In this document: positions 4,195-43,074 of the stretch, one piece after another
Layout: the number at the start of each line of letters is the position of its first letter
Position numbering within the stretch: position 1 is the stretch's first letter
NCBI GenBank assembly: GCA_002269645.1
Contig: NIVC01003092.1
Span: 1-55,594, forward strand
Direction of reading: 5' to 3'
DNA length: 55,594 nt
DNA from: Macrostomum lignano
Lineage: Eukaryota
Position numbers and translations under genes: made by a program
Notes under the pieces: model-generated
Seen by the model: only the letters and a program-made list of their open reading frames with translations
What the model was told of the DNA's origin: nothing
The model's database searches: none

Positions 4195-4950
4195 ATGAAC
4201 TCAAAACGCTCACTGCAGCTGCTGCTCAGTGCAGCCCTCTTCTTGATGCCGATATCGACTCAAAGCCTGTTCCAGACTGTCAGAACTCGCAGTGCGGTGG
4301 CTCCGACAGTCACGGACTCTGCGCCAGGCAGCGTCAGCCTGGAGTGCGCATCGCTCTGCGCCCTGAGACCCGCCTGCTTCGGCTTCAGCCTGCTGCGGGG
4401 CCTCTGCCGCTTCTTCGATCTGTGGGCTTTTGAAAACGGCACTTGGCACAGCTCGGATGAGTGCGACCTGCACATCATGCTGACGGGTGAGTCCTCACTG
4501 TGAACCCGCCCGAGTTTTGGTTCGATAGAATAACTGAAAGGAACTGTGGGATATTGCAGACAAAGCCAAGCTGCAATTCATCAGCTGCCAGCAGAGCTCG
4601 GTTGAACACGGCTCAGTGTGCGGGAAGGCCATCGATGGAGTCAAAAATCAGGACGTAAAAAAGGATTCTGTAGCCACACTGGTAAAGGAAAAAGCGGCTG
4701 GTGGGAGGGCCAGCTGGCCAGACCTGCCTTCATCTCTCACGTCACCATCTACAACAGAGTTGACTGCTGCATGAACCGACTCAACAAGCTGTCACTGATT
4801 GCTGACGGTGTCGAGTGCAACCGGGTGGACCTGACGGTGCCGTTCTCTGTGGCCAGCTTCACCTGCAAGGCTTTCGGCAGCAAAGTGAGGATTGTTAACC
4901 TGCAAGACGTACCTTTGAATATGTGTGAAGTGGAGATCTACGGTCGCTGA
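4195..4950 (+). CDS. A1: secreted PAN/apple-like + F-type lectin (fucolectin) domain protein, with a 1-nt frameshift
   Basis: Exons 4195-4486 and 4560-4950 (GTGAGT donor, TTGCAG acceptor, phase 1). Signal peptide MNSKRSLQLLLSAALFLMPISTQS; PAN-type ECASLC...C...C; F-lectin motif H-x26-RVD-CCMN-R. Spliced length is 683 nt; the frame shifts in the A6 run at 4657-4662 relative to paralog A2. It is either a pseudogene or a sequencing error. Confidence 0.85.
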
Positions 4951-6984
4951 TTAATTGCTGAATTCTCTTGAAAGAAGACTTAATTCTGTGCTACAAGTGC
5001 AAAGTTAGAAGCATAGATGATGAGCGGTAAAGTAGCAGTTAACAGTCGTTATATTGAAATATTTCCCTATTGTTTTCAGACAACTATTTCTCACTATTTT
5101 AATTTCAGTTAAATGAAAAGGAAAAAAAACGCAAAAACATAAAACAAACGAAAACAATCATCTAATGTTCAAGACATATCTACTTTAATGTTTTTAATTT
5201 TTATTCATCTTGAAGTGGACTAAAAAACTAACGATATCTTTCTCTGTTTACCTGCACTGTTTCCTCATTTCTAAAGTTTTTGCTTTGTTTTCCACTGAAA
5301 CATTAGGACTCAACCGCTCGCATATAATAAATAGTTAAAAAACGTAGAGCCTAAAACTATGTTTAGAGTGGGTTTAGCTTTTTATGATGCATGTGCATTC
5401 AGGCAGACTAAGGAAGATAAAAAGTTTAATCTACGTTAATAAGCTCATTTGATTCGACTGATATCAAATGCAATAACAATAAAAATTTGATGCTGAAAGT
5501 TGTTGGATATCCGTCTGTTTCCAGTTACACTTGCTGGTAAACCCGCTCTTCCGTAAATAATCTCAAGTAAAAATCTCGTGGTAGGGAATAACCACGGGCT
5601 ATGGACAGGCTGACAAGATAAGCAAGAGCAGAAGCAAAAACGAAAACATTAAATTGAAGACAAATCGGCGCGAAAGGAGTATATTGGAGTGTAATACGGT
5701 GGCGAGAAAATAGCCCTTGAACTTATGAAATTATTTTGTTAAAATTAAGAAGTCTCTATACTTGTAAAGACTTCACTTAGTTTGCGTGGCAGAAAGATGC
5801 TTATGCGATAGCATGATAAAATCATTCATATATGTATTTGTCGAAATAGTATTTTAACCGATCAATAATTTGGGGACTGTAAAATAGACAAGTCACGTGC
5901 ATGTACGCACAAAAGAACAAGCGAAGGAGAGAGTTAAAGAGCACGATGGTAAAGTGTACGCAGCAACCCCCTCAGCACCCCACAATACACAAGCCAAGTC
6001 ACTATACTACAAATCTACAATACAACAGAGCCTCTCAAGCTCTTCCCTTGCCTGCCGAATCGGCTTCCTTGCGGAATCGGGTATTAGCTGACACCATATG
6101 ACGCGTCTATCCAGGAAGGCAGATGTACTCCGGCGTAAGGCTTTCTGTTCACCGGGTCTTAATTTGTCCGGGGGACATCGCAAAGCAAAATTATTGTCGC
6201 TTTGCGATAACCTACCCTGGATAATCCAAGGCGCAACAAAATCGGGCTTTGAAATGTCATGGGTCTTGAATTGTCCGGTGAATAAAAATTGGGGTGGCAA
6301 GTTAGTCAAATTATTTACAAGACCAGGCGCTTGTGAATGCGTGGGGCAGAAGCCGAAGGAACATCATTAAGCGAGAATAGGACTGACTCAGAGTGCTTGG
6401 GAGGGGCAGATAAGATGCCCGTGCAAGCGTACATCTACCCGTGCAAGCGTACATGCCATGAATATCAGTGTACGAGCTAATAGGCCGCAAAGGAATGTTC
6501 GCTAAAATTATAATACAACTATTCTTTTCAGATAGTTGGAATAAATTTCTTGCCTAAGTCCTACGTTTTGGAAAAATAATTCACTCGGTGGCCAAAGCAA
6601 CGCTAAAACAAGTGTTTTTTTACGTTTTTAGCGACGAGCATGTTGAGCTGCCAGAACATTACAGTACAAGAGAGAGACAAATGTCTCGGCAAAATTAGCT
6701 CGTACTTATCAGCTGGCTGGTTTCCCAAACTGTGAAAACGGAAAGCATCTAAGCGGATGGCCAATTTTTGATTTATCGAATTAGATTGGTGAATGGAGTA
6801 ACAAACTGGTTTTTGGTTGACAATAGTAGCTTTAATTTTAGTTCCTTTTGGAGAGTGAAACGCGAAATGGTTTTTGAAATATGCACCGTTAAATAAGCAT
6901 GACGCAGATGTTTGCCATGGAAAAAGTAGCAAAAAGTGATTTTCTACTTTGCGAAAAGTCTTCTCGAAAGTTTCTATTTCTATA

Positions 6985-8105: not shown

Positions 8106-9593
8106 ATGGCAAAACAACTTTTATCGATAAAGTTTGCTTATGTATTCGGTAAGTGACTGAACTATAGCCGCCACTATGATTTTAATACCAATTAGTTTTA
8201 CGCTTTAGGTTGCACTCTGTTCTTCAATGACAACAAAGTAAATTATCCCAACGCAGTTTGCTGCTCTCTCGTGCTTCGAGTACAAGGCACCAGTTTGCGG
8301 ACCTATTCTGTGTGCTCAGAGCAGCAGCTTCACATGCTGGAAGCCGTTCTGAACGCCTACAACAACGTCACGACAACAACCAAGGCCACTGATGCAACCG
8401 ACTGTCTAGCGAAGTGCCAGAGGGTGAGCTGCAGCGCTGCCGTCTCGGTGGAGAGCAATGCCACGTGCGAGATGGTCACCATAACAACCGCCAAGCTGTC
8501 AATCTCAGCAAATCAGGTGCAGCAAGTCATCGGATCTCAGGTCGGTGCGAAGGTGTGGAAGGCGGACGACAGCGACTGGCCTTCGCCTGCAGTGCAGCTT
8601 TGGAGTGAGTCATCAATGCATAGTCTTAGTCGTAAGTTGTTACCAAGATTTCGGCAGACAGAAATTGCACTCACTCCAGTTCTGCACGACGCTGCTCCGT
8701 TGCAGACAGCAGCACAGGTAGAAACGGCTCAATCCAAAGCGTCCTCATCAACACGACCGGCTGCTACCTGATCAAAGCTGCCGGCGCCAGAGGTGGCCAC
8801 AACTTACTGACGAACACACCCGGAGGCCAGGGAGCCCAGGTGAGCGCCAGAGTCAACCTGACAGCCGGCACCCAGCTGAGCATCGTTGTGGGCCAGATGG
8901 GCGGCTCGACCTCTCGAAATAGCGAAGGAGGCGGCGGAGGCGGCGGCAGCTTCGTGTACCGGACGGGTGACCAGCTGCTGCTGCTGGCTGCCGGCGGAGG
9001 CGGCGGAGCTTCTTGCTTAGAAAATGGTGAGCCCAGTAGCTGTAGTGTAAATTATAAAAAAAATCCACTTGAATCAACAATTTGATTTTACCGTAGGTAA
9101 ACCAGGAGAGACTGGGATAAACGGTTCTGACAGCCTGGGTAACGTCGCTAAATACACGGGATTCGGTGGCAGCAACGGTCAGCCGGGCTACAACAGCCCC
9201 GCTGACACCAGAAGCGATAGAACCCATGGAGGCTGCGGCGCCGGCTGGCTCGGCAGGGCCGTCAAGCGCAGGCGGAGCTCCTCGGACGGAGAGAGAGGCG
9301 GCAGTCTGGCCGACGGCTGGGTCGGCGGCAGCGCCGGAGACGGCAGCGTCTGCGACGGCGGCTTCGGTGGAGGCGGCGGAGGCGGCAGCAGGACCAGCTC
9401 ACTGAAAGGCGCCCCTGGAGCCGGCGGCGGCTTCAGCGGCGGCGGAGCCGGACTGAGCTACGGTCACGTCGGCGGCGGCGGCGGCTCCTTCTGCAGGGGC
9501 GGCTGCGTGTTCTGTGGCACCTCTACCGGGCACCAGGGCTTCGTCTCCGTCCTGCTGGAGTCGACCTCGGCCGCTTGCGATTCGGGCACCTGA
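8106..9593 (+). CDS. B1: secreted PAN/apple-like + ALK/LTK-type glycine-rich domain protein, 402 aa
   Basis: Exons 8106-8148, 8257-8604, 8706-9026, 9097-9593; all introns GT-AG phase 1; 1209 nt, open frame. Signal peptide MAKQLLSIKFAYVFVCCSLVLRVQG. PAN DCLAKCQRVSC...C. Gly-rich domain motifs GCYLIKAAGARGG, LSIVVGQMG, GGGGGGSF, LLAAGGGGG, GGSLADGWVGG, DGGFGGGGGG, GAGGGFSGG. Several N-x-S/T sequons; no TM segment before the stop. Confidence 0.9.
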
Positions 9594-10671: not shown

Positions 10672-11228
10672 TGGTAGAGATGCAGGGAGGCAGAGATGCA
10701 GGGCGGAGGCAGAGATGCAGGGTGGTGGCAGAGATGCAGGGAGGTGATAGAGACGCAGGGCGGAGGCAGAGATGCAGGGCGGTGGCAGAGATGCAAGGAG
10801 GTGGCAGAGATGCAGGAAGGTAGCAGAGATGCAGGGAGGTGGCAGAGATGCAGGAAGGTGGCAGAGATGCAGGAAGGTGGCAGAGATGCATGGAGGTGGC
10901 AGAGATGCAGGGAGGTGAGAGAGATGCAGGAAGGTGGCAGAGATGCATGGAGGTGGCAGAGATGCAGGGAGGTGATAGAGACGCAGGGCGGAGGCAGAGA
11001 TGCAGGGAGGTGATAGAGACGCAGGGCGGAGGCAGAGATGCAGGGAGGTGAGAGAGATGCAGGGCGGTGACAGAGATGCAGGGCGGTGACAGAGATGCAT
11101 GGAGGTGAGAAAGAGGCAGGGAGGTGAGAAAGAGGCAGGGAGGTGGCGGAGATGCAGGGAGGTGAGAGAGATGCAGGGCGGTGGCAGAGATGCAGGGAGG
11201 TGGCAGAGATGCAGGGATCGGTGACAGA
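10672..11228. repeat. 19-bp minisatellite (gcagagatgcagggaggtg and variants)
   Basis: About 29 imperfect copies read directly. Confidence 0.95.
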
Positions 11229-12478: not shown

Positions 12479-12714
12479 GACTGAACCTCGGTTAGAATAC
12501 AGGAAAACTTTATTCAATTTGAATCTTGCAAGAACTAAAACAAAAGTAGCAAGCATGCCGTTTCAATTTCACTGTCAAAGTTCAGTAAGGGTATGATAAA
12601 AAACATTTTCCACGTAACATAAACAGTGAAAATTATATTCATAAACTTTATTATACGATCTGTCTCTCCTTCATCTCCGACTGATCGGTGACTAGCGGAT
12701 TCATACATCGCTGC

Positions 12715-13290
12715 ACCTCGCTGCATCTCTGCTAGCTCCCTGCATCTCTGCTAGCTCGCTGCATCTCTGCTAGCTCCCTGCATCTCTGCTAGCTCCCTGC
12801 ATCTCTGCTAGCTCCCTGCATCCCTGCTAGCTCCCTGCATCTCTGCTAGCTCGCTGCATCTCTGCTAGCTCCCTGCATCTCTGCTAGCTCGCTGCATCTC
12901 TGCTAGCTCCCTGCATCTCTGCTAGCTCCCTGAATCTCTGCTAGCTCCCTGCATCCCTGCTAGCTCCCTGCATCTCTGCTAGCTCGCTGCATCTCTGCTA
13001 GCTCCCTGCATCTCTGCTAGCTCCCTGCATCTCTGCTAGCTCGCTGCATCTCTGCTAGCTCCCTGCATCTCTGCTAGCTCCCTGAATCCCTGCTAGCTCC
13101 CTGCATCCCTGTATCCCTCCTAGCTCCCTGCATCCCTCCTAGCTCCCTGTATCCCTCCTAGCTCCCTGTATCCCTCCTAGCTCCCTGCATCCCTCCTAGC
13201 TCCATGTATCCCTCCTAGCTCCCTGCATCCCTCCTAGCTCCCTGTATCCCTCCTAGCTCCCTGCATCCCTCCTAGCTCCCTGCATCCCTC
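12715..13290. repeat. 19-bp minisatellite (gctagctccctgcatctct, grading into ccctcctagctccctgcat)
   Basis: About 30 copies. The reverse complement gcagagatgcagggagcta matches 16 of 19 nt of the 10672-11228 unit. Confidence 0.95.
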
Positions 13291-13299
13291 CTAGCTCCC

Positions 13300-13560
13300 T
13301 GCATCCCTTCCGTCCCGCTTTATCAAGCAGTATGGAAGGGCGCAGATGCGAGCAGGAAGGCAGCTGCAGTCGAGCGGCCTTGGCATGCACCGAAAGCAGA
13401 CATTGAAGGACAGATGAACACACATTTTTCCGCTCGTCTAAAAAAACCTCCGACAATTCTCCGGTAGGAAAAAAGGACGAGCGGCTACGGACAAAGAAGT
13501 GTATTTAGTGTATTTAGTGATAAGAACTTAGTGAGTAGTCAGATTTCGAGTCACTTAACT
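13300..13560 (-). other. Conserved downstream element of B2
   Basis: Reverse-complement homolog of 10085-10345. Confidence 0.7.
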
Positions 13561-13955: not shown

Positions 13956-16900
13956 TCAGGTGTCCAAGTTGCAGGTGGCTGAGTCCGACTCCAGCAGGAC
14001 GGACACGAAGCCCTGGTCGCCGGTCCAGGTGCCGCCGAACACGCAGCCGCCACTACAGAAGGAGCCGCCGCCGCCGCCGCTGTGGCCGAAGCCCAGTCCG
14101 GCTCCGCCACCGCTGAAGCCGCCACCACCTCCAGCCGTTCCATTAAGTGGGCTGGTCCTGCTGCCGCATCCGCCGCCTCCGCCGAAGCCTCCGTCGCAGA
14201 CGCTGCCATCTCCGGCGCTGCCGCCGACCCAGCCGTCGGCCAGACTGCCGCCTCTCTCTCCGTCCGAGGAGCTCCTCCTGGGGCTGACGGCCCTGCCGAG
14301 CCAGCCGGCGCCGCAGCCACCGTGGTTGCTATGGCTTGGGGTTCCAGAGGGGCTGTTGGAGCCCGGATTACCGTTGGTGCCGCCGAATCCAGCCAGGGTA
14401 GTGCCGGCACCAAGACTGTCAGAACCGTTTATCCCAGTCTCTCCCTGTTGTCCTACGGTATAATCAAGCAAGCTGCTTATCAGTGGCTTTTCGGTTCATA
14501 ATTTACATATTTTTAGCAAAATGCAGCCACTGAGCTCACCGTTTCTACTAAAGGAAGCTCCGCCGCCTCCGCCGGCAGCAAGCAGCAGCAGCTGGTCGAC
14601 CGTCCGGTACACAAAGCTGCCGCCCCCTCCACCGCCTCCTTCTAAATCCAAGGAGGTCGAGCCGCCCATCTGACCCACAACGATGCTCAGCTGTGTGCCG
14701 GCTGTCAGGTTGACTCTGGCGCTCACCTGGGCTCCCTGGCCTCCAGATGTGCTCCTCAGTAAGTTGTGGCCACCTCTGGCGCCGGCAGCTTTGATCAGGT
14801 AGCAGCCGGTCGTGTTGATGAGGACGCTTTGGATTGAGCCGTTTCTACCTGTGCTGCTGTCTGCAACGGAGCAGCGTCAGCGAGTTACAGAACTGGAGTG
14901 AGTGCAATTTTTGTCTGTGCCAGAATCGTAGTTGCGTTGGTTTGTGACTGGTTCTAACCTGTGACTATCCAGTTTTGAATCCCAATCTTCGGCCCTGCCA
15001 GTGTCGCCCTGCATGCGTTCTCTCTTCCACTTGTCCACGCTGTATGGACTGCTTGGCTCTGTGTGCCTTGAGTGGTGGCCTGGTGGGGGCGGGCTTTAGC
15101 CTCGGCGTCTTGTATTTGCATCTCGCTATGTTTACTCAGTGCTTTGGGATGTCTGTATGAGCTCAAAACTTTAGCTGTAAATTTTCGATTTGCCGTCATA
15201 TCTGATATCGACCGGTTAAAAATGGCCCAAGTTCTCACGGCTCTGAGAGACAAAGGCCTGCCGGCTTCGGTAAATACGAGGGGTGATCAAAAAGTTCTGC
15301 AACCTTTTGTTATAGCTTTTAGTTATAGAATCAGCAAAAGCCAAAAACTTACACATATGCGGCTATATCTGTTTGCTATATTTATATGCATTTTTGGCTT
15401 CCAAATGTGCTCCAGTAAAATTTCACAGCCATATATTTTCCATGTGTTTTCAGTAGCTGATGGAAACATCAAAAGACAGTGTTCGCTTCTATATCTTTAT
15501 GTGCATGCAACTTGGTTGCAAAGTGACAGAGATTCACACCATGTTTTGTGAATGTTTTAGCTGACTCTGCTCCATCATTTGACACAGTTGCCTGCTGTCT
15601 CGCATACTGCTTCATTCTATCCCGTCTCGTCTCCTTCGTCATACTCTATACAGTCGCGTCTGATGGCGCCCTAACTACTGACAAATGTAGAGGTTTATCC
15701 ATTCATAGAATGTTACTGTAAGTAGACTAATGCAAACACGCATAGCAAAACTTAAACTGTTAATCATGTTACTATTAAAACGGAGAAATGGATCATGTTA
15801 TCATTTATAATGAAAAAGATGAATCATGCTACTCGTATTATTCATATCTCGCAAAAATTGCTTATAAATACAAGCAAAAAATCCGAGATGGAATCTTAGA
15901 CTCGGAGCAGCCTCAAGAGGACTTGAGAACAACCAAGAACTACGAGGCTACATCTCTGAGAGAAGTAAATACCGTTCGGTAAGTCTTTGTTGGAGTCTTT
16001 GTTATTTGATTACTGAGAGCTTTGTTACCGCCGGCCGTACTGATCAGTTGATTTCTATAGAGTTGTTGACTTTGAGGCCTCCCTTTTCCTAAGGGATTGG
16101 ATAAGATCTGCGGACCGATACCGATACTCTTAGACGATTATCGATTGATTGATTTTGGTACCCTAGAGTAACAGATAGGGGCACAAGACTCTGATTCTCC
16201 CTCAGAAGACGCCCTCTCAGAGGACCTCGTTATTGTTACTGGGTAATAGATGTTACTACGTAATATTGCTAATAGGGCTCATCTCTGATTTTGATTACTA
16301 ATTTCGAAGAATACATTGACGTCGACAGATCGAATTGTTACGTTCACTAAAGTGCTCTCATACTCGGCCGACTTCAGAATCCAAGAAACTCCGGAGGAAG
16401 ACTACATTGAGGAGACAAGCTCTATGGATCTGTCTGACAACTGAGGAGCCCGCAATAGTGAGTGATCACTAAATTCTGTTCCCAGACTTGCGGTCTGGAA
16501 GTGGGAGTTTTTGAGTGACTAATCACCACTCTTAAACTACTCACAAAATCTAACCAGCCCGCCAAGCCGCCAGGCAAAGCCGCCAATTCAGACACCGGGT
16601 CGATTTTTCACCCGGTGTCTCACCATAGTTTCAATATACTAGCCTGCGTCATGAATTCTTCATCGTCAAAAAGCCAGCTCAATCAGTCGCCGAAGTCAGC
16701 AACTACGAATCCGCTCTTTGTGAGGACAGAAAGACAGCTGGTTGAGTTCCAGATCAAAGAGGAAGATGAGACTGGCCGCACTTGATTAGAATCAGGTTGC
16801 TACCGCGCATCTCCGTTCGTGGCAATGCTGCTGTTGATCTTCTTTAGGTTTAATGCGTTGGTCTGTGACTGCTTCTGACTTGTTACTAACCAGTTTTAGG

Positions 16901-17725
16901 CAACACTACTCTGCCCTGTCTATGTCGCCTTGCGTGCGTCCTTTCTCTCTCTCTCTGCCCACGCTGTAGAGGGGGGGAGGGCGTTACTCGGCTCTGCGTG
17001 CATGGGGTGGTGACTCGATGGGGGGTGGGCGCCGTCGCCCTTATATTTGCGTCTTGCTCCGTCTAATCAGCGGTTTTGGCTGCCTGCGACAACTCAAAGT
17101 TTTTTCTCTAAAGTTCTTCTTTGCATCACTGTTTTAATTGGTTTTGCCAACTACACTTTGATTTCGAACTTTTGCTTTTACGTGCCATTGCTGCTTTTGT
17201 ATCTTCTCTAGATTTAAAACCACCCACGACTATAAATTGCTGACTCACTCTGAAGATGCACTGCAGGCGAAGGCCAGTCGCTGTCGTTCGCCTTCCACAC
17301 CTTCGCACCGACCTGAGATCCGATGACTTGCTGCACCTGATTTGCTGAGATTGACAGCTTGGCGGTTGTTATGGTGACCATCTCGCACGTGGCATTGCTC
17401 TCCACCGAGACGGCAGCGCTGCAGCTCACCCTCTGGCACTTTGCTAGACAGTCGATATGAGTAGCCTTGGTTGTTGTCGTGACGTTGTTGTAGGCGTTCA
17501 GAACGGCTTCCAGCATGAGAAGCTGCTGCTCTGAGCACACAGAATAAGTCCGCAAACTGGTGCCTTGTACTCGAAGCACGAGAGAGCAGCAAACTGCGTT
17601 GGGGCAATGCGCGGTCAGTAATGAACAGCATGCATTGAATAACTGTGAGCAGCGGTTTTGAGTCAGGAAGGGAGTCACTTACCGAATAAGAAAAGTAATT
17701 GTAAAGACAAAATTTGATCAGTCAT
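13956..17725 (-). CDS. B2: secreted PAN + ALK/LTK-type glycine-rich domain protein, 401 aa; intron 2 expanded by about 2.3 kb of nested insertions
   Basis: Exons 17725-17683, 17593-17249, 14860-14540, 14452-13956; 1206 nt, open frame, phase-1 GT-AG introns. Signal peptide MTDQILSLQLLFLFVCCSLVLRVQG. Intron-2 homology to B3/B5 breaks near 14936 and resumes near 17214. Confidence 0.88.
14940..17213 (+). mobile_element. Two tandem copies of an unclassified ~350-450-bp dispersed repeat; the first is split by nested insertions
   Basis: 14942-15175 is similar to 16855-17100 (gcgttggt.tgtgactg...ccagtttt...gtcgcc.tgc.tgcgt...ctcaaa). 16790-16850 and 17110-17210 both match the 38090-38240 end of a third, inverted copy. 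Confidence 0.6.
15275..15620 (+). mobile_element. Tc1/mariner transposon 5' relic
   Basis: Mariner-type TIR start tacgaggggtgatcaaaagt at 15275. ATG at 15460 gives METSKDSVRFYIFMCMQLGCKVTEIHTMFCE, then after a frameshift DSAPSFDTVA, matching the mariner N-terminal HTH pattern (G..ATEIH..L..VYGD.APS..TV). Confidence 0.75.
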
Positions 17726-21269: not shown

Positions 21270-22825
21270 TCAACTAGTTAAACCCCACCTCAACAAGCGG
21301 TTGCAGTGCCACCAGGTGCCCGAGTCGCAGGCGGCTGAGGCCGACTCCAGTATGATAGACACGAAGCCCTGGTCCCCGATCCAGGTGCCGCCGAAGACGC
21401 AGCCGCCCTTGCAGAAGGAGCCGCCGCCGCCGCCGATGTGGCCGTGGCTCAATCCGGCTCCGCCGCCGCTGAAGCCGCCGCCGGCCCCAGGGGTGCCTTT
21501 CAGTGAGCTGGTCCTGTGGCCGCATCCGCCGCCTCCGCCGAAGCCTCCGTCGCAGACGCTGCCGTCTCCGGCGCTGCCGCCGACCCAGCCGTCGGCCAGA
21601 CTGCCGCCTCTCTCTCCGTCCGAGGAGCTCCGCCTGGGGCTGACGGCCCTGCCGAGCCAGCCGGCGCCGCAGCCTCCATGGGTTCTATCGCTTGGGGTGT
21701 CAGCGGGATTGTTGTAGCCCGGCTGACCGTTGCTGCCGCCGAATCCCATGTATGCGCTGTTTGCTCCGATGCTGTCAGAACCGTTTATCCCAGTCTCTCC
21801 CGGCTGTCCTACATTTAAATTAATCCAACTGCCGATGTAATCTTATGTAATCTAATGCCGGTTTTTGGTTCGCATATTGTAGAATCTACCCTACTGCCGC
21901 TACTGAGCTCACCATTTTCACCGGTTGATGCTCCGCCGCCTCCGCCGGCAGCTAGCAGCAGCAGCTGGTCGACCGTCCGGTACATGAAGCTGCCGCCCCC
22001 TCCGCCGCCTCCTTCGATATCCAACGACGTCGAGCCGCCCATCTGACCCACAACGATGCTCAGCTGTGTGCCGGCTGTCAGGTTGACTCTGGCGCTCACC
22101 TGGGCTCCCTGGCCTCCAGATGTGCTCCTCAGTAAGTTGTGGCCACCTCTGGCGCCGGCAGCTTTGATCAGGTAGCAGCCGGTCGTGTTGATGAGGACGC
22201 TTTCGATTGAGCCGTTTCTGCCTGTGCTGCTGTCTGCAATGAAGCAGCGTCAGCGAGTTATAGAACTGGATTGAGTGCAATTTCTGTCTGTGCCAAAATC
22301 ATGGTAACCATCCACAACTAAGACTATGTATTGATGACTCACTCCGAAGCTGCACTGCAGGCGAAGGCCAGTCGCTGTCGTCCGCCTTCCACACCTTCGC
22401 ACCGACCTGAGATCCGATGACTTGCTGCACCTGATTTGCTGAGATTGACAGCTTGGCGGTTGTTATGGTGACCATCTCGCACGTGGCATTGCTCTCCACT
22501 GAGACGGCAGCGCTGCACCTCACCCTCTGGCACTTTGCTAGACAGTCGATATGAGTGGCCTTGGTTGTAGTCGTGACGTTGTTGTAGGCGTTCAGAACGG
22601 CTTCCAGCATCTGAAGCTGTTGCTCTGAGCACACAGAATAGGTCCGCAAACTGGTGCCTCGTACTCGAAGCACGAGAGAGCAGCAAACTGCGTTGGGGCA
22701 ATGCGTGGTCAGTAATACAGTACACAGCATGCATGGAATAACTGTGAGCATAGGTTTTTAAGTCAAGATTGCAGTCACTTACCGAATAAGCAAAGTAATT
22801 GTAAAGACAGAACTTTATCATCCAT
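21270..22825 (-). CDS. B3: secreted PAN + ALK/LTK-type glycine-rich domain protein, 415 aa (C-terminally extended)
   Basis: Exons 22825-22783, 22687-22343, 22233-21913, 21808-21270; 1248 nt, open frame. TGG at 21312-21314 replaces the TGA of the paralogs and adds WWHCNRLLRWGLTS. Confidence 0.9.
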
Positions 22826-28770: not shown

Positions 28771-29005
28771 ACAGCAGCACAGGTAGAAACGGCTCAATCC
28801 AAAGCGTCGTCATCAGCATGACCGGCTGCTACCTGATCAAAGATGCCAGCGCAAAAGTAGGCAGAAACTTACTGACTTGCACATCCGGAGTCTGCCTGAC
28901 AGCCGGTGCACAGCTGAACACCGTTGTTGGACGGATGGGCGGCTCGACCTCCTTGGATTTGGAAGGAGGCGGCGGTGGCGGCAGCTTCGTTTTCCAGACG
29001 AGCAT
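28771..29005 (+). pseudogene. Isolated, degraded exon 3 of family B
   Basis: Conserved acceptor ccattgcag|acagcagcacaggtagaaacgg. Translates TGCYLIKDASAKVGRNLLTCTSG[deletion]LTAGAQLNTVVGRMGGSTSLDLEGGGGGGSF and is then truncated; no flanking exons. Confidence 0.9.
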
Positions 29006-29622: not shown

Positions 29623-30378
29623 TCAACGCCCGTAGATCTCGACTTCACACAGGTTCATAGGTTTTTCCTGCAGGTTGACAATTCTGACTTTGCTGCCAAA
29701 AGCCTTGCAGGTGAAGCTGACCACAGAGAACGGCACCGTCAGGTCCACCCGGTTGCACTCGACACCGTCAGCAATCAGCGACAGCTTGTTGAGGCGGTTT
29801 ATGCAGCAATCAACTCTGTTGTAGATGGTGACGTGCGAGATGAAGGCAGGTCTGGCCAGCTGGCCTTCCCACCAGCCCTTTGCTCTATTAGCCGTATGAC
29901 TACAAAATCCTGAGTTCTGATTTTTGACTCCATCGATGGCCTTCCCGCACACTGAGCCGTATTCAACCGAGCTCTGCTGGCAGCTGATGAATCTCAGCTT
30001 GGCTTTGTCTGCTATGTCCCAGAGTTCCTTTCAGTTATTTTATTGATTCATACCAAAACTCGGGCGGGTTCGCAGTGAGGACTCACCAGTCAGCATGATG
30101 TGCAGGTCGCACTCATTCGAGCTGTGCCAAGTGCCGTTTTCAAAAGCCCACAGATCGAAGAAGCGGCAGAGGCCCCGCAGCAGGCTGAAGCCGAAGCAGG
30201 CGGGTCTCAGGGCGCAGAGCGATGCGCACTCCAGGCTGACGCTGCCTGGCGCAGAGTCCGTGACTGTCGGAGCCACCGCACTGCGAGTTCTGACAGTCTG
30301 GAACAGGCTTTGAGTCGATATCGGCATGAAGAAGAGGGCTGCACTGAGCAGCAGCTGCAGTGAGCGTTTTGGCTTCAT
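29623..30378 (-). CDS. A2: secreted PAN/apple-like + F-type lectin (fucolectin) domain protein, 225 aa, intact
   Basis: Exons 30378-30087 and 30008-29623; 678 nt, open frame. Signal peptide MKPKRSLQLLLSAALFFMPISTQS. F-lectin features AIDG, CSHT, WW and an exact H-x26-R-x-D-x4-R (HT...RVDCCINR). Confidence 0.92.
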
Positions 30379-31981
30379 TCGATGCTGTGCGTGGATAAAA
30401 CAAGGTTTCCTTAAAAGATCGGCCTTTTAGACATGTTTTAACTCTGCGTGCGCGCTCCATTGGAGAAAGGCTCCATCATTGGTCGAATTGGTTGAGCTTG
30501 TAGTTGAGATGCTTCACGGCTATTGGTGGGAGTCGCGCAATAGTCATGCAGTAGGTATTTTAAACTGTGTTTAGTGCAGAAATACAGTTTTGTACAAGTT
30601 TTTTTGTTTATTGTTTGTCTCCAATCTCAAATGATCATCGGCTTCATTAGACAATAGACCCACTGGTGGGAACAGTTCCATCGTGAGTAGAACTCTTTGT
30701 TTCAAATTCGAATTCAGCAAAAAGTTTCATCTACAGTTGAATGAATCCCCGACAGAAGCGCAAGATCAAGTTCTAGCACTGCCCAGACACCTCAGATGAA
30801 TACCAATTTACAAGTTCGCTGCTGGCGATAATAAACTGGCTACCTGAATATTTACTTAATCAAGAATAATTTTGATTTGGCGTGTCTAGAAAACTCCAGA
30901 AAATATCTGGTACGATATAACGACAAGCGGCTGGTGACATACAGGTACAAATCGATTGTGTTCAAGGTTAGTTTTACTGCAACAGGTGTAGTGTGTTTCA
31001 AATGCGTAGTTGATTAGTTCAGCAAAGGTTCCAGACCTGCGTGCCAATGGGTCCCTCTTTGTACACAGAAAAGCTGCACAATTTTTGTCAAGATCAAAAG
31101 AAAACTTTATAACCCTCATGTGTTGGGAAGTGAGCGAAACAGAAGCAGCATAGAAGTCAAGCTAATCTTAACATTCCTAGCTCTGCAGCAACGAAGGCGA
31201 ATACGTTGAAAAGTAGCTCGCCTATGATATTATCTGACAGAAGTTCCAGGCGATGTTTCAGGTGCAGCACAATGGCAGAGATCGTGCGTAAGGAATTAAA
31301 ACAACCAAAGTTATAAAATCTCCTGCACCTGTTCCCTTTATTACTGATGATAACTCTTGCGTCTCTTCTCTTGAATTGAATCGTAAATACTCGTGATGAA
31401 ACTGTGGTCAGCAAAATCAAGTGTCTTTTGTTGCTAAATTTTCCAAGACTTGAAATCTACCGAGACAGATAAAAGCAACCAAGCTCAATTGTGAGTCGAT
31501 AGCGGGAAACCTGTTACAAAAGTATCAGGAAAAATCGATCAATTAGAAGTAGACCAAAAAAAACAATTGAACCGGTGCCAGCATTAAATCGCATATTCCA
31601 AATTTAAGTTGCGAGTTAGGGTTAGGGTTTGAGTTTGGGTTGGGCTCGTAGGGATGCAAAATATTTAATTTTTATCACTATCAGAAACTTTCTCAAGGAA
31701 GATAAAATAGAATAAATTGTCAGCGTTAGCATGAAAACAACCAAAAGCTCACTAAATCAATACATCTGCTCTATGAATACATCTTCGTTATTGTTCAGTC
31801 AAGTTAATACGTAAAAACAACCTATGGAATTCATTCGACGCTCGTATGGCTACTGAGAAATAATCGAGCAGCAGCATCAGGTGTCCAAGTCGCAGGTGGC
31901 TGAGGCCGACTCCAGCAGGACGAACACGAAGCCCTGGACGCCGGTCCAGGTCCCGCCGAAGACGCAGCCGCCCCGGCAGAA

Positions 31982-32209
31982 CCGCCGCAGCCGCCAATGT
32001 GGCCCTGACCCAGTCTGGCCCCGCCGACGCTGAAGCCACCGCCGCAGCCGCCAATGTGGCCCTGACCCAGTCTGGCCCCGCCGACGCTGAAGCCACCGCC
32101 GCAGCCGCCAATGTGGCCCCGACCCAGTCTGGCCCCGCCGACGCTGAAGCCACCGCCGCAGCCGCCAATGTGGCCCTGACCCAGTCTGGCTCCGCCGACG
32201 CTGAAGCCA
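31982..32209. repeat. 4 x 57-bp tandem duplication inside psi-B4 (GGGFSVGGARLGQGHIGGC)
   Basis: Units start at 31982, 32039, 32096 and 32153. Confidence 0.95.
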
Positions 32210-32510
32210 CCGCGGGTCCATCGAAGACGCTGCCGTCTCCGGCGCTGCCGCCGAACCAGACATCGGCCAGACGACTGCCGCTTCTCTTTTACTCTCTCCG
32301 AGCAGCCTGCCTGGGGCAACTCGGCCCTGCCGAGTTAGCGGGCTCCGCAGCCGCCGTGGTGCTAGCGGAGGTGTGTTAGTGGGGTTTTTGACGTCCGGCT
32401 GACCGTTGATGCCACCGAATCCCGCGTTGAGGCTGTAGCCGTCCAGTCCGTCGAAACCGTCAATTCCAGCCTCACCCGGTTGTTCTACGGTGAAATCCAT
32501 CAATCTGCTT

Positions 32511-34994: not shown

Positions 34995-36493
34995 TCAGGT
35001 GCCCGAGTCGCAGGCGGCTGAGGCCGACTCCAGCAGGACAGACACGAAGCCCTGGTCGCCGGTCCAGGTGCCGCCGAACACGCAGCCGCCCCTGCAGAAG
35101 GAGCCGCCGCCACCGCCGCTGTGGCCCTGGGCCAGTCCGGCTCCGCCCCCGCTGAAGCCACCGCCGGCTCCAGGGGCGCCTTTCTCTGAGCTGGTCCTGT
35201 GACCGCCTCCACCGCCTCCGCCGAAGCCTCCATCGCAGACGCTGCCGTCTCCGGCGCTGCCGCCGACCCAGCCGTCGGCCAGACTGCCGCCTCTCTCTCC
35301 GTCCGAGGAGCTCCGCCTGGGGTTGACGGCCCTGCCGAGCCAGCCGGCGCCGCAGCCGCCGTGGTTGCTTTCGCTTGGAGTGTCAGCGGGGTTGTTGAAG
35401 CCTGGCTGACCGTTGATGCCGCCGAATCCTGCGTTTGGTTTGTAGTCACCCAGACTGTCGGAACCGTTGATCCCAGTCCCTCCCGGTAGCCCTACGATGA
35501 AATCAATCAAACTGCTTATCCAAGTTAAATTTTCGCTTTTGAAACTTCCCAATTCTAGCAACAAAGTTAATGAGATCACCATTTCTTTTGAAGCAAGCTC
35601 CGCCGCCTCCGCCGGCAGCAAGCAGCAGCAGCTGGTCGACCGTCTGGTACACGAAGCTGCCGCCGCCTCCGCCGCCTCCTTCGATATCCAACGACGTCGA
35701 GCCGCCCATCTGGCCCACAACGATGCTCAGCTGGGTGCCGGCTGTCAGGTTGACTCTGACGCTCACCTGGGCTCCCTGGCCTCCGGATGTGTTCGTCAGT
35801 AAGTTGTCGCCACCTCTGGCTCCGGCAGCTCTGATCAGGTAGCAGCCGGTCGTGTTGATGAGGACGCTTTGGATTGAGCCGTTTCTACCTGTGCTGCTGT
35901 CTGCAGTGGAGCAGCGTCAGCGAGTTACAAAATGGGAGTGAGTGCAATTTCTGTCTGTGCCAAAATCATGTAAGCCACCCACAACTAAGACTATGCATTG
36001 ATGACTCACTCCGAAGCTGCACTGCAGGAGAAGGCCAGTCGCTGTCGTCCGCCTTCCACACCTTCGCACCGACCTGAGATCCGATGACTTGCTGCATCTG
36101 ATTTGCTGAGATTGACAGCTTGGCGGTTGTTATGGTGACCATCTCGCACGTGGCATTGCTCTCCACCGAGACGGCAGCGCTGCAGCTCACCCTCTGGCAC
36201 TTTGCTAGACAGTCGGTTGCATCAGTGGCTTTGGTTGTTGTTCTGACGTTGTTGTAGACGTTCAGAACGGCTTCCAGCATGTGAAGCTGCTGCTCTGAGC
36301 ACACAGAATAGGTCCGCAAACTGGTGGTGCCTTGTACTCGCAGCACGAGAGAGCAGCAAACTGCGTTGGGGCAATTGGTTGTCATTAATAAATAGCATGC
36401 ATTGAATAACTTTTAGCAGCGGTTTTTAAGTCAAGATTGCAGTCACTTACCGAATAATAAAAGCAATTGTAAAGACAGAATTTTATTAGTCAT
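34995..36493 (-). CDS. B5: secreted PAN + ALK/LTK-type glycine-rich domain protein, 403 aa
   Basis: Exons 36493-36451, 36360-36010, 35900-35580, 35491-34995; 1212 nt, open frame. The intron-3 donor is GTGATC (weaker than GTGAGC in the paralogs). Signal peptide MTNKILSLQLLLLFVCCSLVLRVQG. Confidence 0.88.
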
Positions 36494-40998: not shown

Positions 40999-43074
40999 TC
41001 AGGCCAGTTGAATCATCAGTCGAATGCTCTTTAGGGCAACTAGGCCTCCAGCGGTGGCACCTGACCAATACATATATGCTAAGCCGCTCACTGCAGAGTT
41101 GTGATAAATCCCGTTCGGATTGGACTTTGAACAGCTTTGGAACCACCAACCTGAGTTTCCACGGGCGCTAGAACAGGCGGTACCATAATTATCGTTGTCT
41201 CGGTCCATGGTGGAGAACTGCATCCCCTTGTTGGCAGCAAGCGAGTTGCTGGTCGTGTTGGAACTGCCGCTCAGGTACGAAGTGTAGGTCATGATGTAGT
41301 TCGTGCTGGCATCGGCCACCGTGAAGCCGGAGTACTCGCAGACGTACAGCTCATCCGACCAGGTGACGGTCTCGACTCGCAAAAGTTTCGGTGAGCTTCC
41401 GGTCAGCTCGTGCATTTTACGAAGACCTGAAAATGTATTTGATATCATCTTTTGTTCGACTAAGCCGTCTGTTCGAATGAATTCTACGTGCTGCTCACCA
41501 ATCCAGAAGTCCGTGTCGTCTCCAAAGCCTTTTTCGTACTCAGTCCAACCGCGAGCAAAGCTGAGCTCGCCCTTCGATCTGTGCTGAATCACTTGGAATG
41601 TTTGACCACTGATTTCAACTAGCTTTTCTGAAAAAAGAAAAATAATAAACGTTAGCTTTAGTATTAAATGTCATCTCAGATATCTTGTACTGCCCCAAAA
41701 CTCACTGTCGCTCTTCGACAGAGCTTCGTTTCAGGAACAAAGGCGAAAGCAGAGCAGTCTTTTTTGTGCGAGGACTCGCACTTCAGAGCGCAGTCTACAG
41801 CGCTGTGACCAGGCTGCGATGTCATCGGAGCCGTCGTGGTTAGCAAAATCTCGACTTTAGAAAACACTGAAACATTGAAATAAACTTCCATCTGGTCCAG
41901 GACTGATGGAACTTTTAGGTTCAGCTGCGGTGTACCAGCGTATCGGATGCGAAACTGAATTTCAAATCTGTCGCAGCTATATTGTTGTGAATTGATTTGA
42001 GCTAAATATAGCAAAAGCCATGCGGACAAATCACAAGGACAACTTAAGCAGAAGGACGCAACACTCGAAATCTATGGTAAATGTTTTGAAGGCAACTCTT
42101 CGCCAGAGGAATACACTACGGAGATAGGAAACTTCACGATTTTTAACACTAAAACAGTGATTGGGTCTCTTAACAGTGTCAGAGAAAATCCTAAGCACAC
42201 TATTTTGTGCCTCAAATGCTGCTCTAACGGCTCATTAATCGATTTTTCATGTTAAATTAGCCTGTCACTTGAAAAAAAAACGTTAAAAATAATGACAAGA
42301 CCAATTCAACACGAAAAATCGATTAATGTGTCGTTAGAGCAGCATGTGAGGCACAAAATAGTGTGCTTAGGATTTTCTCTGACACTGTTAAGAGACCCAA
42401 TCACTGTTTTAGTGTTGAAAATCGTGAAATTTCCTATCTCCATAGTGTATTTTTCCTGTGAAATCTGCCTTAAGAACTATTTCTGAACGAAAAGCTTTAT
42501 GAATATCGATAGAGCAATAAGAACAGCACAACATATCAAAAGATAAACACTGGATCTGCCTCCTATCAAAAGCAATTACAATTTTTGTGCTGAAAAATGA
42601 AAACCTATCTCTGTAGTGTATTTTTCGGCGAAAAGTTGCCTTCGAAACATTTACCATATGTTTCGAGTGTAGCGTTCTATATATATATATATATATATAT
42701 ATGTTACTTGAGTAGTCCTTGACATATCATATTAAAAAGACTTTAAGATTAAAAGACTTAAGACTTAAAGATTAAAAAGTCTTATGAATATAATTCGATG
42801 TGTTCGAGCTATTACGATAGCCGTCCTGTGTGCCGGCCTTCTCAACACAAAATGAAATTAAAATCGCTCAGACCCCAGGTGAGATTAGATTTATTATAGA
42901 TTTATTTTTGTAACTTCATTAAAATAAAATTTGATTTATTTTAATGAACATTTGACAATAGGTTGAGCTGTAATCTAATTTACAATGGAACCTACCGGAT
43001 ACTGTGGTAGCGCCAGTCAAGAACGGAGTCCCGCCGATCAGCAACGCAGCAACGGCGACGAGAAAAACGGACAT
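40999..43074 (-). CDS. Secreted PAN/apple-like + fibrinogen-related domain (FReD) protein, about 265 aa
   Basis: Exon 1 43074-42996 (MSVFLVAVAALLIGGTPFLTGATTVS, GTAGGT donor, phase 1). PAN exon 41866 (or 42001)-41706 with DCALKCESSHKKDCSAFAFVPETKLC. FReD exons 41627-41499 and 41426-40999 with VIQHR, F.RGW.EY..GFG, FWIGL, FST.DRDND, GWWF..C..SN.NG. The PAN-FReD junction is 1 nt out of phase with the GTGAGT donor. Confidence 0.8.
42062..42669. mobile_element. MITE/foldback element in intron 1 of the PAN-FReD gene
   Basis: Long inverted arms cactcgaaa...atggtaaatgtt.. (42062-42270) and 42292-42460 plus 42600-42669; TA on the right flank, AA on the left. Confidence 0.8.
42678..42702. repeat. (TA)n microsatellite
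   Basis: Read directly. Confidence 0.95.

What the first reader, a model, noticed from the sequence alone, without database searches (positions are those of the whole stretch)
9003..9240. Hypervariable patches in otherwise near-identical B paralogs
Seen: long exon stretches are identical among paralogs, yet short patches differ in nearly every copy. After GINGSDS(L/I)G the six residues are NVAKYT (B1, 9141-9158), AGTTLA (B2), ANSAYM (B3), DYKPNA (B5) and GYSLNA (psi-B4). The exon-3 end reads ASCLEN, ASFSRN, ASTGEN or ACFKRN. A further patch reads YNSPADTRSDRT, SNSPSGTPSHSN, YNNPADTPSDRT or FNNPADTPSESN. Inference: these are surface loops between PGII helices under diversifying selection, i.e. 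specificity-determining loops as in gp38-type adhesins.
Basis: partly seen in the sequence, partly recalled or inferred. Interest (0 to 1): 0.75.

Follow-up and report, generated by a model that had tools for sequence, protein, structure and literature searches.

The report
Hypervariable loops on a polyglycine scaffold
A cluster of duplicated flatworm (Macrostomum lignano) genes encodes proteins that look secreted and have a rigid glycine-rich fold related to the ligand-binding domain of the human ALK receptor; a few short loops differ in nearly every gene copy, and one of them has changed faster than neutral DNA, as expected for a binding-specificity loop.

Summary
The window is Macrostomum lignano DNA. 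It holds four intact paralogs (B1, B2, B3, B5), one truncated pseudogene and one exon fragment. The gene encodes a PAN/Apple-like domain followed by an ALK/LTK-type TNF-like plus polyglycine-II ("TG") domain. That fold assignment rests on an AlphaFold2 model (pLDDT 90.9) and Foldseek matches to LTK/ALK (E about 2e-9).

Amino-acid changes cluster in short loops between family-invariant glycine motifs (0 of 100,000 permutations reach the observed clustering). The same loops carry the differences in independent UniProt paralogs, at 3-17 times the framework rate.

The four patches behave differently:
- **P2 (9141-9158, NVAKYT)** is saturated, with 1.42 changes per site at codon positions 1+2. Neutral proxies give 0.21-0.26 (four-fold sites, intron 2) and 0.60-0.68 (3'UTR, intron 3). 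It beats all four proxies. It is also the most variable stretch in 91 homologs from other animals.
- **P1 (exon-3 end) and P0** exceed the exon and intron-2 proxies only.
- **P3 (YNSPADTRSDRT)** is no faster than neutral and looks shuffled by recombination.

Diversifying selection is therefore supported for one loop, possible for two, and not supported for the fourth. I could not test whether the loops cluster on one face, because no model coordinates were available. The gp38 comparison holds as an analogy of design, not as family membership.

The parts
8257..8604 (+). B1 exon 2: PAN/Apple-like domain. The 5' limit is uncertain and there is no in-frame ATG upstream in B1.
   Evidence: Translation. 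It is collinear with the Pfam PAN_1 region of coral protein P0068. UniProt names the paralogs 'Apple domain-containing'. Pfam PAN itself was not detected here.
8706..9026 (+). B1 exon 3: first half of the TG (TNF-like + glycine-rich) domain, residues 1-106 counted from SSTGRNG.
   Evidence: Beta strands at 9-13, 18-25, 43-51, 56-60, 81-85 and 90-95 in the AF2 model.
8915..8923 (+). Patch P0 (residues 70-72): RNS in B1, LDL/LDI/LDY/LSS in other copies. It lies at the tip between VGQMGG and GGGGGGG.
   Evidence: Homologs from other animals carry an insertion of about 19 residues here.
9011..9025 (+). Patch P1a (residues 102-106, the exon-3 end): SCLEN in B1. There are 22 distinct strings among 38 regex-extracted strings from M. 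lignano models (a few from distant paralogs are off-target).
9027..9096 (+). Intron 3 (GT..AG). It is much more diverged (0.68 changes/site, many indels) than intron 2 (0.21).
9099..9104 (+). Patch P1b (residues 108-109): KP / QQ / QP / LP.
9105..9140 (+). Conserved GETGINGSDSLG segment between P1 and P2, with G-x-x-G periodicity.
9141..9158 (+). Patch P2 (residues 122-127, NVAKYT): the truly hypervariable loop. It is saturated at all codon positions and its length is conserved.
9189..9224 (+). Patch P3 (residues 138-149, YNSPADTRSDRT): moderately variable, no faster than neutral, with motifs shared between paralogs.
9097..9593 (+). B1 exon 4: second half of the TG domain, through the stop codon.
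13956..14862 (-). B2 exons 3-4 (P1a 14540-14557, P2 14391-14408, P3 14325-14360). Its PAN exon lies 2.3 kb upstream at 17228-17678.
   Evidence: The TG domain is 100% identical to UniProt A0A1I8HRN4.
21270..22751 (-). B3, complete ORF-bearing copy with a signal-peptide-like start (P1a 21913-21930, P2 21747-21764, P3 21681-21716). The stop codon is changed to TGG, adding 18 residues.
34995..36370 (-). B5 (P1a 35580-35597, P2 35430-35447, P3 35364-35399).
31877..32503 (-). psi-B4: an exon-4-only copy, broken after P3, with a 57-bp x4.1 internal tandem repeat. Its P2 is GYSLNA at 32423-32440.
28827..29000 (+). Isolated, degraded fragment of a B exon 3.

Best explanation
The B genes are a young, partly inverted cluster of M. 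lignano paralogs. Each encodes an apparently secreted protein with a PAN/Apple-like domain followed by an ALK/LTK-type TG domain, that is, a TNF-like beta-sandwich from which a lattice of polyglycine-II segments grows.

The sandwich and the glycine motifs are the scaffold, and purifying selection holds them nearly constant (dN/dS about 0.3). The short non-glycine segments that join successive glycine motifs are loops. I propose that these loops contact the ligand. Each paralog carries its own combination, so the family (at least 13 distinct P2 loop variants in M. lignano protein models) would offer a germline-encoded set of binding specificities.

Diversity arises in three ways:
- gene duplication;
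- repeated amino-acid replacement under diversifying selection, clearest in the 6-residue loop P2 and probable in P1 and P0;
- recombination or gene conversion between paralogs, which reshuffles loop variants (seen in P3 and P0) and helps keep the framework alike.

Shown here: the fold, the loop positions relative to invariant motifs, the excess rate in P2, the recombination signal, and the generality across paralogs and across other animals. Inferred: that the loops are exposed, lie at one end of the lattice, and bind a ligand. The ligand is unknown. Because the neighbouring genes are lectin-like, a sugar or microbial surface is the best guess.
For: **Fold**
- The AF2 model has pLDDT 90.9 and pTM 0.89.
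- Foldseek PDB ranks 1-21 are all LTK/ALK TG domains (E 2e-9 to 2e-6, TM 0.47-0.66).
- A profile search hits ALK 7n00 at E 9.4e-13.
- BFVD matches to phage and giant-virus glycine-rich structural proteins reach E 5e-16 and TM 0.72.

**Clustering**
- 0 of 100,000 permutations reach the observed clustering.

**Rates (minimum changes per site among four copies)**
- Neutral proxies: four-fold sites 0.26, intron 2 0.21, 3'UTR 0.60, intron 3 0.68.
- Framework codon positions 1+2: 0.097.
- P2 positions 1+2: 1.42 (random sequence would give 1.73). P1: 0.81. P0: 0.83. P3: 0.375.
- In simulation, P2 exceeds each proxy: p<1e-5, <1e-5, 1e-4 and 3.7e-4.
- After correcting for 266 possible windows this remains <0.03 for three proxies and 0.098 for intron 3.
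- The counts do not depend on a tree, so recombination cannot inflate them.

**Independent replication**
- In UniProt paralogs not used to define the patches, differences are 3-17 times denser in the patches.
- For example, P0128 versus P0130 has 0/147 framework differences and 5/29 patch differences (Fisher p 9e-5). P0133 versus P0134 has 15/147 and 17/29.

**Generality**
- P2 is the highest-entropy stretch (2.22 bits, mean 0.73) in 91 homologs from other animals.

**Signs of function rather than decay**
- Loop length is conserved with no indels among the window copies, although intron 3 is full of indels.

**Against a mutational hotspot**
- B1 and its near-twin P0132 differ at 3 framework residues but share identical P1 and P2.

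**Recombination**
- All three possible groupings of the four copies occur, in blocks (7, 16 and 15 informative sites).

**Context**
- The neighbouring genes are lectin-like and secreted: two genes with a PAN-like domain plus a galactose-binding-like domain (F5/8 type C_2), and a fibrinogen-C-domain ORF.

**Design precedent**
- gp38 is built of conserved glycine-rich motifs and hypervariable segments (GRM/HVS; PMC3157838). Pam3 gp24 has TNF-like plus glycine-rich domains with a hypervariable distal tip (PMC9608196).
Against: - No coordinates were available, so exposure and co-location of the loops are untested.
- Strict alternation of antiparallel glycine segments could put P2 at the opposite end from P1 and P3.
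- Intron 3 and the 3'UTR are 2-3 times more diverged than intron 2 and the four-fold sites.
- If they reflect the true age of the copies, and the framework was homogenised by conversion, then only P2 beats neutrality, and only modestly (corrected p about 0.1 against intron 3).
- P3 fails the test outright.
- Third codon positions inside P2 are almost as diverged as positions 1+2 (1.17 against 1.42). That fits very old or replaced sequence as well as repeated selection.
- Only four intact DNA copies were available, so no site-model test was possible.
- There is no expression, localisation or binding data. B1 itself lacks a clear start codon.
Confidence: 0.6

Rival explanations
1. Relaxed constraint without positive selection. 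The paralogs are older than the exon bodies suggest. Gene conversion plus purifying selection keeps the glycine/beta framework alike, and the loops are simply free to drift and have drifted to saturation.
For: - Recombination between copies is evident.
- Intron 3, which lies between P1a and P1b, is 3 times more diverged than intron 2, as if this region escaped homogenisation.
- P3 and P1 are no faster than intron 3 or the 3'UTR.
- dN/dS computed within the patches is 0.46-0.84 overall.
- P2 is variable across the whole family, which is also what a structurally tolerant loop would show.
Against: - P2 still exceeds even the intron 3 rate (p 3.7e-4 uncorrected).
- Conversion tracts cannot by themselves leave an 18-bp island unconverted between segments of about 30 bp that are homogenised, so selection for keeping the differences would still be needed.
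- Loop lengths are conserved while the intron has accumulated many indels.
- Paralogs with 0/147 framework differences already differ at 5/29 patch residues.
Confidence: 0.27
2. A local mutational mechanism produces the patches: hypermutation, compensated frameshifts, or copying of short cassettes from donor sequences.
For: - All three codon positions in P2 are randomised (and the counts).
- P3 and P0 variants are shared between otherwise different paralogs, which is cassette-like.
- One pair (B1/B3 in P2) aligns slightly better with gaps than shuffled sequence does (p 0.04, uncorrected).
Against: - No donor copy of any P1a or P2 variant exists elsewhere in the window.
- Gapped alignments of P2, P1a and P0 are in general no better than shuffles.
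- Near-identical copies (B1/P0132, B2/P0001, P0002/P0122) carry identical P1 and P2 while their frameworks differ, so the patches are not currently hypermutable.
- P2 variants show graded relationships (GYASFT / GYAPFT / GYAPFA; DYKPNA / GYSLNA), as expected from stepwise substitution.
Confidence: 0.08
3. Artefact: the copies are decaying pseudogenes or assembly errors, and the patches are junk.
For: psi-B4 and the exon-3 fragment are broken. B1 lacks an obvious start codon. B3 has lost its stop codon. B2 carries a 2.3-kb insertion in intron 2.
Against: - Four copies keep open frames through 271 codons with framework dN/dS of about 0.3.
- Splice sites are conserved.
- The same patches recur in an independent annotation of the species.
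- The AF2 model is confident through the patches (block pLDDT means 79-96 over the blocks that hold the patches).
Confidence: 0.04

Closest known systems
ALK/LTK extracellular TG domain (TNF-like + glycine-rich; Pfam PF12810; PDB 7nx1, 7nx0, 7nwz, 7ls0, 7n00)
   Same: - Same fold: a beta-sandwich with an inserted lattice of glycine segments (Foldseek E about 2e-9, TM 0.6-0.66; profile E 9e-13).
- In ALK and LTK this domain is the cytokine-binding module (PMC12017499).
   Different: - There is no kinase, no transmembrane segment and no EGF, MAM or LDLa modules. The gene stops right after the domain.
- It is a multigene family in a cluster, with a PAN-like domain in front.
- Sequence identity to ALK/LTK is only 22-28%.
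- A single B sequence falls below Pfam's curated cut-off (22.0 and 16.5 bits against 24.5).
Cyanophage Pam3 tail fibre gp24, and related phage and giant-virus glycine-rich structural proteins
   Same: - TNF-like domain plus glycine-rich domain.
- Paired glycine-rich motifs form hairpins whose tips are less conserved and are proposed to bind the host receptor (PMC9608196).
- Many BFVD viral models match the B1 model significantly.
   Different: - The match to the solved Pam3 structure itself is not significant (E 0.13, TM 0.24).
- The phage proteins are trimeric virion fibres with chaperones.
- The B proteins are animal proteins, probably monomeric and secreted.
gp38 adhesins of T2/T6/S16-type phages (glycine-rich motifs alternating with hypervariable segments)
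   Same: - Strictly conserved glycine-rich motifs separate short hypervariable segments.
- Each segment has a restricted set of motifs that recombination can exchange. P3 and P0 behave this way here (PMC3157838).
   Different: - No significant fold or sequence match to gp38 appeared among the listed PDB hits.
- gp38 lacks the TNF-like sandwich arrangement found here.
- The function of the variable segments is proven genetically for gp38 and is not tested here.
Coral and other marine-invertebrate PAN (+/- EGF) + glycine-rich-domain proteins (e.g. Stylophora pistillata P0068)
   Same: - Same domain order, PAN then TG domain.
- 32% identity over 380 residues, collinear.
- The same loop (P2) is their most variable stretch.
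   Different: - They carry a loop about 19 residues longer at P0, and P1 is conserved in them.
- None is functionally characterised, and no paper on them was found in the library.
Diversified lectin-type recognition families of invertebrates (e.g. snail fibrinogen-related proteins)
   Same: Clustered multigene families of secreted proteins with a conserved fold and variable binding regions. A fibrinogen-domain ORF and lectin-like genes sit in the same window. The comparison itself rests on general knowledge.
   Different: Unrelated fold. No evidence here for somatic diversification or for an immune role.

Membership tests
ALK/LTK glycine-rich (TG) domain superfamily, PF12810 | Single-sequence Pfam PF12810 score above the curated cut-off (24.5 bits) | tested here: not met
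   B1 scores 22.0 bits (E 1.9e-4) and B3 16.5 bits. Several M. lignano paralogs do carry a precomputed PF12810 hit.
ALK/LTK glycine-rich (TG) domain superfamily, PF12810 | Profile-level sequence homology to solved ALK/LTK TG domains | tested here: met
   The profile of 105 homologs hits ALK 7n00 at E 9.4e-13, and also scd-2 and LTK.
ALK/LTK glycine-rich (TG) domain superfamily, PF12810 | Fold: TNF-like beta-sandwich with an inserted polyglycine lattice | tested here: met
   AF2 pLDDT 90.9. Foldseek ranks 1-21 are all ALK/LTK/scd-2 TG domains with probability 1.00 and TM 0.47-0.66. PGII geometry itself was not measured, because no coordinates are returned.
ALK/LTK receptor tyrosine kinases (orthology) | Transmembrane segment and intracellular kinase domain after the TG/EGF region | tested here: not met
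   The ORF ends 9 residues after the last beta strand, with a stop at 9591-9593. No kinase was found in the Pfam scans.
gp38-type phage adhesins | Conserved glycine-rich motifs alternating with hypervariable segments | tested here: met
   The definition comes from PMC3157838.
gp38-type phage adhesins | Detectable sequence or fold homology to gp38 (e.g. S16 gp38, PDB 6F45) | tested here: not met
   gp38 is absent from the PDB hits listed. The nearest phage structure, the Pam3 fibre, scores E 0.13.
gp38-type phage adhesins | Variable segments lie together at the distal tip and determine receptor specificity | not testable with these tools
   The structure tool returns no coordinates, and there are no binding data.
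Gene families under diversifying selection | Replacement rate above the neutral rate at the variable sites | tested here: inconclusive
   Met for P2 against four neutral proxies. Met for P1 and P0 only against the four-fold-site rate (which intron 2 matches). Not met for P3. Only four DNA copies were available, so no site models were run.
PAN/Apple domain proteins | Pfam PAN match in the N-terminal exon | tested here: not met
   No PAN hit even at E 10. The region is collinear with the PAN_1 domain of coral P0068, and UniProt names the paralogs as Apple-domain proteins.

The most novel reading that the evidence does not exclude
Flatworms, and perhaps cnidarians and other marine invertebrates, possess a previously unrecognised family of germline-encoded variable recognition proteins. 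These proteins would be built on the polyglycine-II/TNF-like scaffold. That scaffold also forms the ligand-binding domain of ALK and the receptor-binding tips of some phage tail fibres. Hypervariable hairpin tips would serve as the binding site, and the family would act in recognising microbes or sugars alongside the neighbouring lectin genes.
Probability: 0.2. Interest if true: 0.8.

Novelty: new variant of a known kind. Interest (0 to 1): 0.6.

Why it matters
The polyglycine-II/TNF-like TG domain is known functionally only as the cytokine-binding module of ALK and LTK, and as a phage fibre tip. Here the same scaffold appears as an expanded family of stand-alone proteins that look secreted. 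Its conserved glycine framework presents a few fast-changing loops.

If those loops are binding sites, three things follow:
- It would be an animal counterpart of the phage adhesin design.
- It would be a candidate new class of invertebrate recognition molecules.
- It would be a natural library showing which positions of this very rigid scaffold tolerate or exploit variation, which is useful for understanding ALK ligand recognition and for protein engineering.

The claim is directly testable in Macrostomum lignano, which is a laboratory model with RNAi and transgenesis (general knowledge).

Tried and rejected
1. **Compensated frameshifts as the source of the patches.** Gapped alignments of P2, P1a and P0 between copies are in general no better than shuffled sequence. 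Only B1/B3 in P2 reaches p 0.04, uncorrected.
2. **Donor cassettes in the window.** There are none for P1a or P2 at up to 2 mismatches. The rest of the genome could not be searched.
3. **dN/dS inside the patches by Nei-Gojobori**. This is uninformative, because both classes of site are saturated and there are only 3-8 synonymous sites per patch. I replaced it with tree-free minimum-change counts set against four neutral proxies, with simulation.
4. **Mapping the patches onto the ALK-ALKAL interface.**
   - The three 2021 structure papers are not held, and the reviews held give no residue lists.
   - By the profile alignment, the ALK segment TFHPERLENNSSVLG aligns with P1b plus the conserved GETGINGSDSLG segment, and ALK LNGNSG aligns with P2.
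   - From memory, ALK E859 is a ligand contact and would align with the conserved E111, not with a patch. This is a lead only.
5. **Single-sequence search of solved structures.** It barely sees LTK (E 0.1), so a profile was needed.
6. **Literature on PF12810 proteins outside ALK/LTK, or on this family in Macrostomum.** Nothing relevant was found.
7. **UniProt models P0132 and P0001 as evidence of a fused lectin-B gene.** I rejected this. The upstream 'A' gene has its own stop codon, and P0132 even reads into the antisense strand of B2.
Full report
**1. What the region is**

The window is eukaryotic. The finding lies in a gene I call B1, on the plus strand.
- Exon 3 is 8706-9026.
- A 70-bp GT..AG intron is 9027-9096.
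- Exon 4 is 9097-9593 and ends in a stop codon.
- An upstream exon (about 8257-8604) is joined in phase 1.

A tblastn search with the B1 exons finds three further intact copies on the minus strand:
- B2: exons 3-4 at 14862-13956.
- B3: 22751-21270.
- B5: 36370-34995.

It also finds an exon-4-only broken copy (psi-B4, 32503-31877) and a degraded exon-3 fragment (28827-29000).

The 271-residue product of B2 exons 3-4 is identical to UniProt A0A1I8HRN4 of the flatworm Macrostomum lignano. Dozens of further M. lignano models are 50-96% identical. The window is therefore M. lignano DNA.

**2. Check of the observation**

In a nucleotide alignment of the four intact copies, the exon bodies differ at 1-7% of positions. 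Four short patches stand out:

| Patch | Residues | Window coordinates |
|---|---|---|
| P0 | 70-72 | 8915-8923 |
| P1 | 102-106 and 108-109 | 9011-9025 and 9099-9104 |
| P2 | 122-127 | 9141-9158 |
| P3 | 138-149 | 9189-9224 |

P2 differs at 56-72% of nucleotides, which is close to random. Most pairs of P2 sequences are no more alike than shuffled sequences. The clustering of amino-acid changes is far beyond chance: 0 of 100,000 permutations reach it.

**3. What the protein is**

Pfam gives only a sub-threshold ALK/LTK glycine-rich-domain hit for single sequences. Stronger evidence comes from three sources:
- A profile of 105 homologs hits the ALK extracellular domain at E 9e-13.
- AlphaFold2 with that alignment gives a confident model (pLDDT 90.9, pTM 0.89).
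- The 21 best PDB matches of that model are all TG domains (TNF-like plus glycine-rich) of LTK, ALK and the nematode ALK, with probability 1.0 and TM up to 0.66.

Against predicted viral structures, the model matches many glycine-rich virion or fibre proteins of phages and giant viruses (best E 5e-16, TM 0.72). The solved Pam3 cyanophage fibre appears just below significance in the PDB search.

The B genes have no kinase or membrane segment. They end right after the domain.

The upstream exon resembles a PAN/Apple domain in two ways: it is collinear with the coral PAN_1 region, and UniProt names the paralogs that way. Pfam itself does not detect it.

B3 and B5 begin with a signal-peptide-like stretch, judged by eye. 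The closest relatives outside Macrostomum are coral PAN(+EGF)+TG proteins and about 300-residue proteins on gene-poor, animal-like contigs.

**4. Where the patches sit**

All four patches are non-glycine segments bounded by residues that are invariant or nearly so across the whole family: A101/S102, G107, G110, G116, S119, G121, then G130, G131, G134, P136, G137, then H150-W157.

In the model the patches are coil or short 3-10 turns, not beta strands. Isolated bridges at residues 120 and 129 are compatible with closing the P2 loop, though the bridge partners are not reported.

I could not test whether the loops are exposed and lie on one face, because the structure tool returns no coordinates. 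By analogy with Pam3 gp24, where each excursion from the TNF-like sandwich is a hairpin of two glycine motifs with a variable distal tip (PMC9608196), the roughly 6-residue spacing of motifs would place P0, P1, P2 and P3 at successive hairpin tips. This is inference only.

**5. Is it diversifying selection?**

Nei-Gojobori estimates give a framework dN/dS of about 0.3 with dS of 0.15-0.19. Inside the patches both classes of site are saturated, so the internal ratios are meaningless.

I therefore counted the minimum number of changes per site among the four copies. This count needs no tree and cannot be inflated by recombination.

| Class of site | Changes per site |
|---|---|
| Four-fold sites outside the patches | 0.26 |
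| Intron 2 | 0.21 |
| 3'UTR | 0.60 |
| Intron 3 | 0.68 |
| Framework, codon positions 1+2 | 0.097 |
| P2, positions 1+2 | 1.42 |
| P1, positions 1+2 | 0.81 |
| P0, positions 1+2 | 0.83 |
| P3, positions 1+2 | 0.375 |
| Random sequence | 1.73 |

Simulations calibrated to each neutral proxy give these results:
- **P2** has p<1e-5 against four-fold sites and against local third positions, 1e-4 against the 3'UTR, and 3.7e-4 against intron 3. After correcting for 266 possible windows, the last two become 0.027 and 0.098.
- **P1** is significant only against the exon-based proxies (1.3e-4 and 0.008), not against the 3'UTR or intron 3 (0.13 and 0.26).
- **P3** is never significant (0.17-0.99).

**6. 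Independent replication**

The patches were defined on the window copies, so I tested them on UniProt paralogs that played no part in the definition. Differences there are 3-17 times denser in the patches.
- P0128 versus P0130: 0/147 framework differences and 5/29 patch differences (p 9e-5).
- P0133 versus P0134: 15/147 and 17/29 (p 5e-8).

Among the 19 M. lignano sequences that cover P2 there are 13 different P2 strings, one per lineage. The regex pulled 38 exon-3-end strings, 22 of them distinct, though a few from distant paralogs are off-target.

In 91 homologs from other animals, P2 is again the most variable stretch (2.22 bits against a mean of 0.73). In those homologs P1 is conserved and P0 carries a 19-residue insertion.

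**7. Mechanism of diversification**

All three possible two-by-two groupings of the four copies occur, in runs along the gene (7, 16 and 15 sites). The copies have therefore exchanged sequence.

P3 and P0 variants are shared among otherwise different paralogs (for example SNSPASTPS in P0002 and P0128, and YNNPADTPS in B3, P0003 and P0130). This resembles the "restricted palette" described for gp38 segments (PMC3157838).

P2 and P1 variants are unique to each lineage but show graded relationships (GYASFT / GYAPFT / GYAPFA; DYKPNA / GYSLNA), as expected from stepwise substitution.

Three observations argue against hypermutation, cassette copying within the window, and frameshift pairs:
- Near-twin copies keep identical P1 and P2 while their frameworks differ (B1 versus P0132).
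- No donor fragments exist in the window.
- Gapped alignments show no hidden similarity.

**8. The main rival**

Intron 3, which lies between the two halves of P1, and the 3'UTR are 2-3 times more diverged than intron 2 and the silent sites. That pattern would arise if the copies are older than they look and the framework has been homogenised by conversion.

In that case P1, P0 and P3 need only relaxed constraint. P2 still exceeds the oldest proxy. In addition, an 18-bp island surviving between homogenised segments of about 30 bp implies selection against losing the differences. The strict conservation of loop length, next to an indel-ridden intron, also argues for function.

I put the diversifying-selection and binding-loop explanation at about 0.6, and pure relaxation at about 0.27.

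**9. Comparison with what is known**

The B proteins belong to the ALK/LTK-type glycine-rich domain superfamily by profile and by fold. They are not ALK or LTK orthologs.

They work like gp38 and Pam3 gp24 in design: a conserved glycine scaffold with variable segments. They show no significant match to gp38, and no functional test exists.

I found no paper on stand-alone PF12810 proteins in invertebrates or on this family in Macrostomum.

The neighbouring genes are lectin-like and secreted. They are two 'A' genes, each with a PAN-like domain and a galactose-binding-like domain, and a fibrinogen-C-domain ORF. This gives weak contextual support for a recognition role.

**10. Verdict**

The structural half of the claim remains untested.

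I rate the finding a new variant of a known kind, with moderate to high interest.

Noticed in passing
window 4200-4950 (+) and 29650-30400 (-): Two 'A' genes, 92% identical in nucleotide sequence. Each is a small two-exon gene with a signal peptide, a PAN-like Cys-rich domain and a galactose-binding-like domain (F5/8 type C_2, E 1e-7), and each has its own stop codon. UniProt model A0A1I8HRC7 wrongly fuses such a gene with B1 and then with the antisense strand of B2.
   Followed up: partly
window 40999-41592 (-): ORF encoding a fibrinogen C-terminal domain (Pfam E 5e-31). This is another lectin-type domain in the same neighbourhood.
   Followed up: partly
window 46861-55594: Satellite with a 664-bp unit, about 13 copies at about 99.5% identity, running to the end of the window.
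   Followed up: no
window 10672-11217 and 12706-13305: Two 19-bp minisatellite arrays (about 29 and 31 copies) whose units appear to be reverse complements of each other (compared by eye). They lie between the convergent genes B1 (+) and B2 (-), which suggests an inverted duplication.
   Followed up: no
window 14927-17228: B2 is split. Its PAN exon (17228-17678, minus strand) lies 2.3 kb from exon 3, whereas the same intron is about 100 bp in B1, B3 and B5. This looks like an insertion into intron 2.
   Followed up: no
window 21270-21320 (-): In B3 the stop codon shared by the other copies reads TGG, which extends the protein by 18 residues.
   Followed up: no
window 8190-8260 (+): B1 has no in-frame ATG ahead of its PAN exon, because of a 2-bp difference from B5 and B3, which do have one. 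Its start is unresolved, or it may be non-functional.
   Followed up: partly
window 31981-32213 (-): psi-B4 contains a 57-bp x4.1 tandem repeat (98% identical) that multiplies one glycine-motif unit (GGFSxGGAxLGxGHxGG). In effect it is an expansion of a scaffold hairpin, inside a copy that is otherwise frameshifted.
   Followed up: no
window 44750-45055 and 46166-46471: A 306-bp direct repeat, 100% identical, flanks a low-complexity repeat-rich stretch (45153-45817). It could be an LTR-like pair or an assembly duplication.
   Followed up: no
Residues 31-38 also lie between two glycine motifs, and homologs carry a 6-residue insertion there.
   Followed up: partly
locus L001 (ENA contig, 4.8 Mb), gene at 6001-6918: The roughly 300-residue homologs from public assemblies sit on gene-poor contigs beside an animal-type HTH (transposon-like) gene. 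They are therefore single-exon animal genes rather than bacterial ones.
   Followed up: partly
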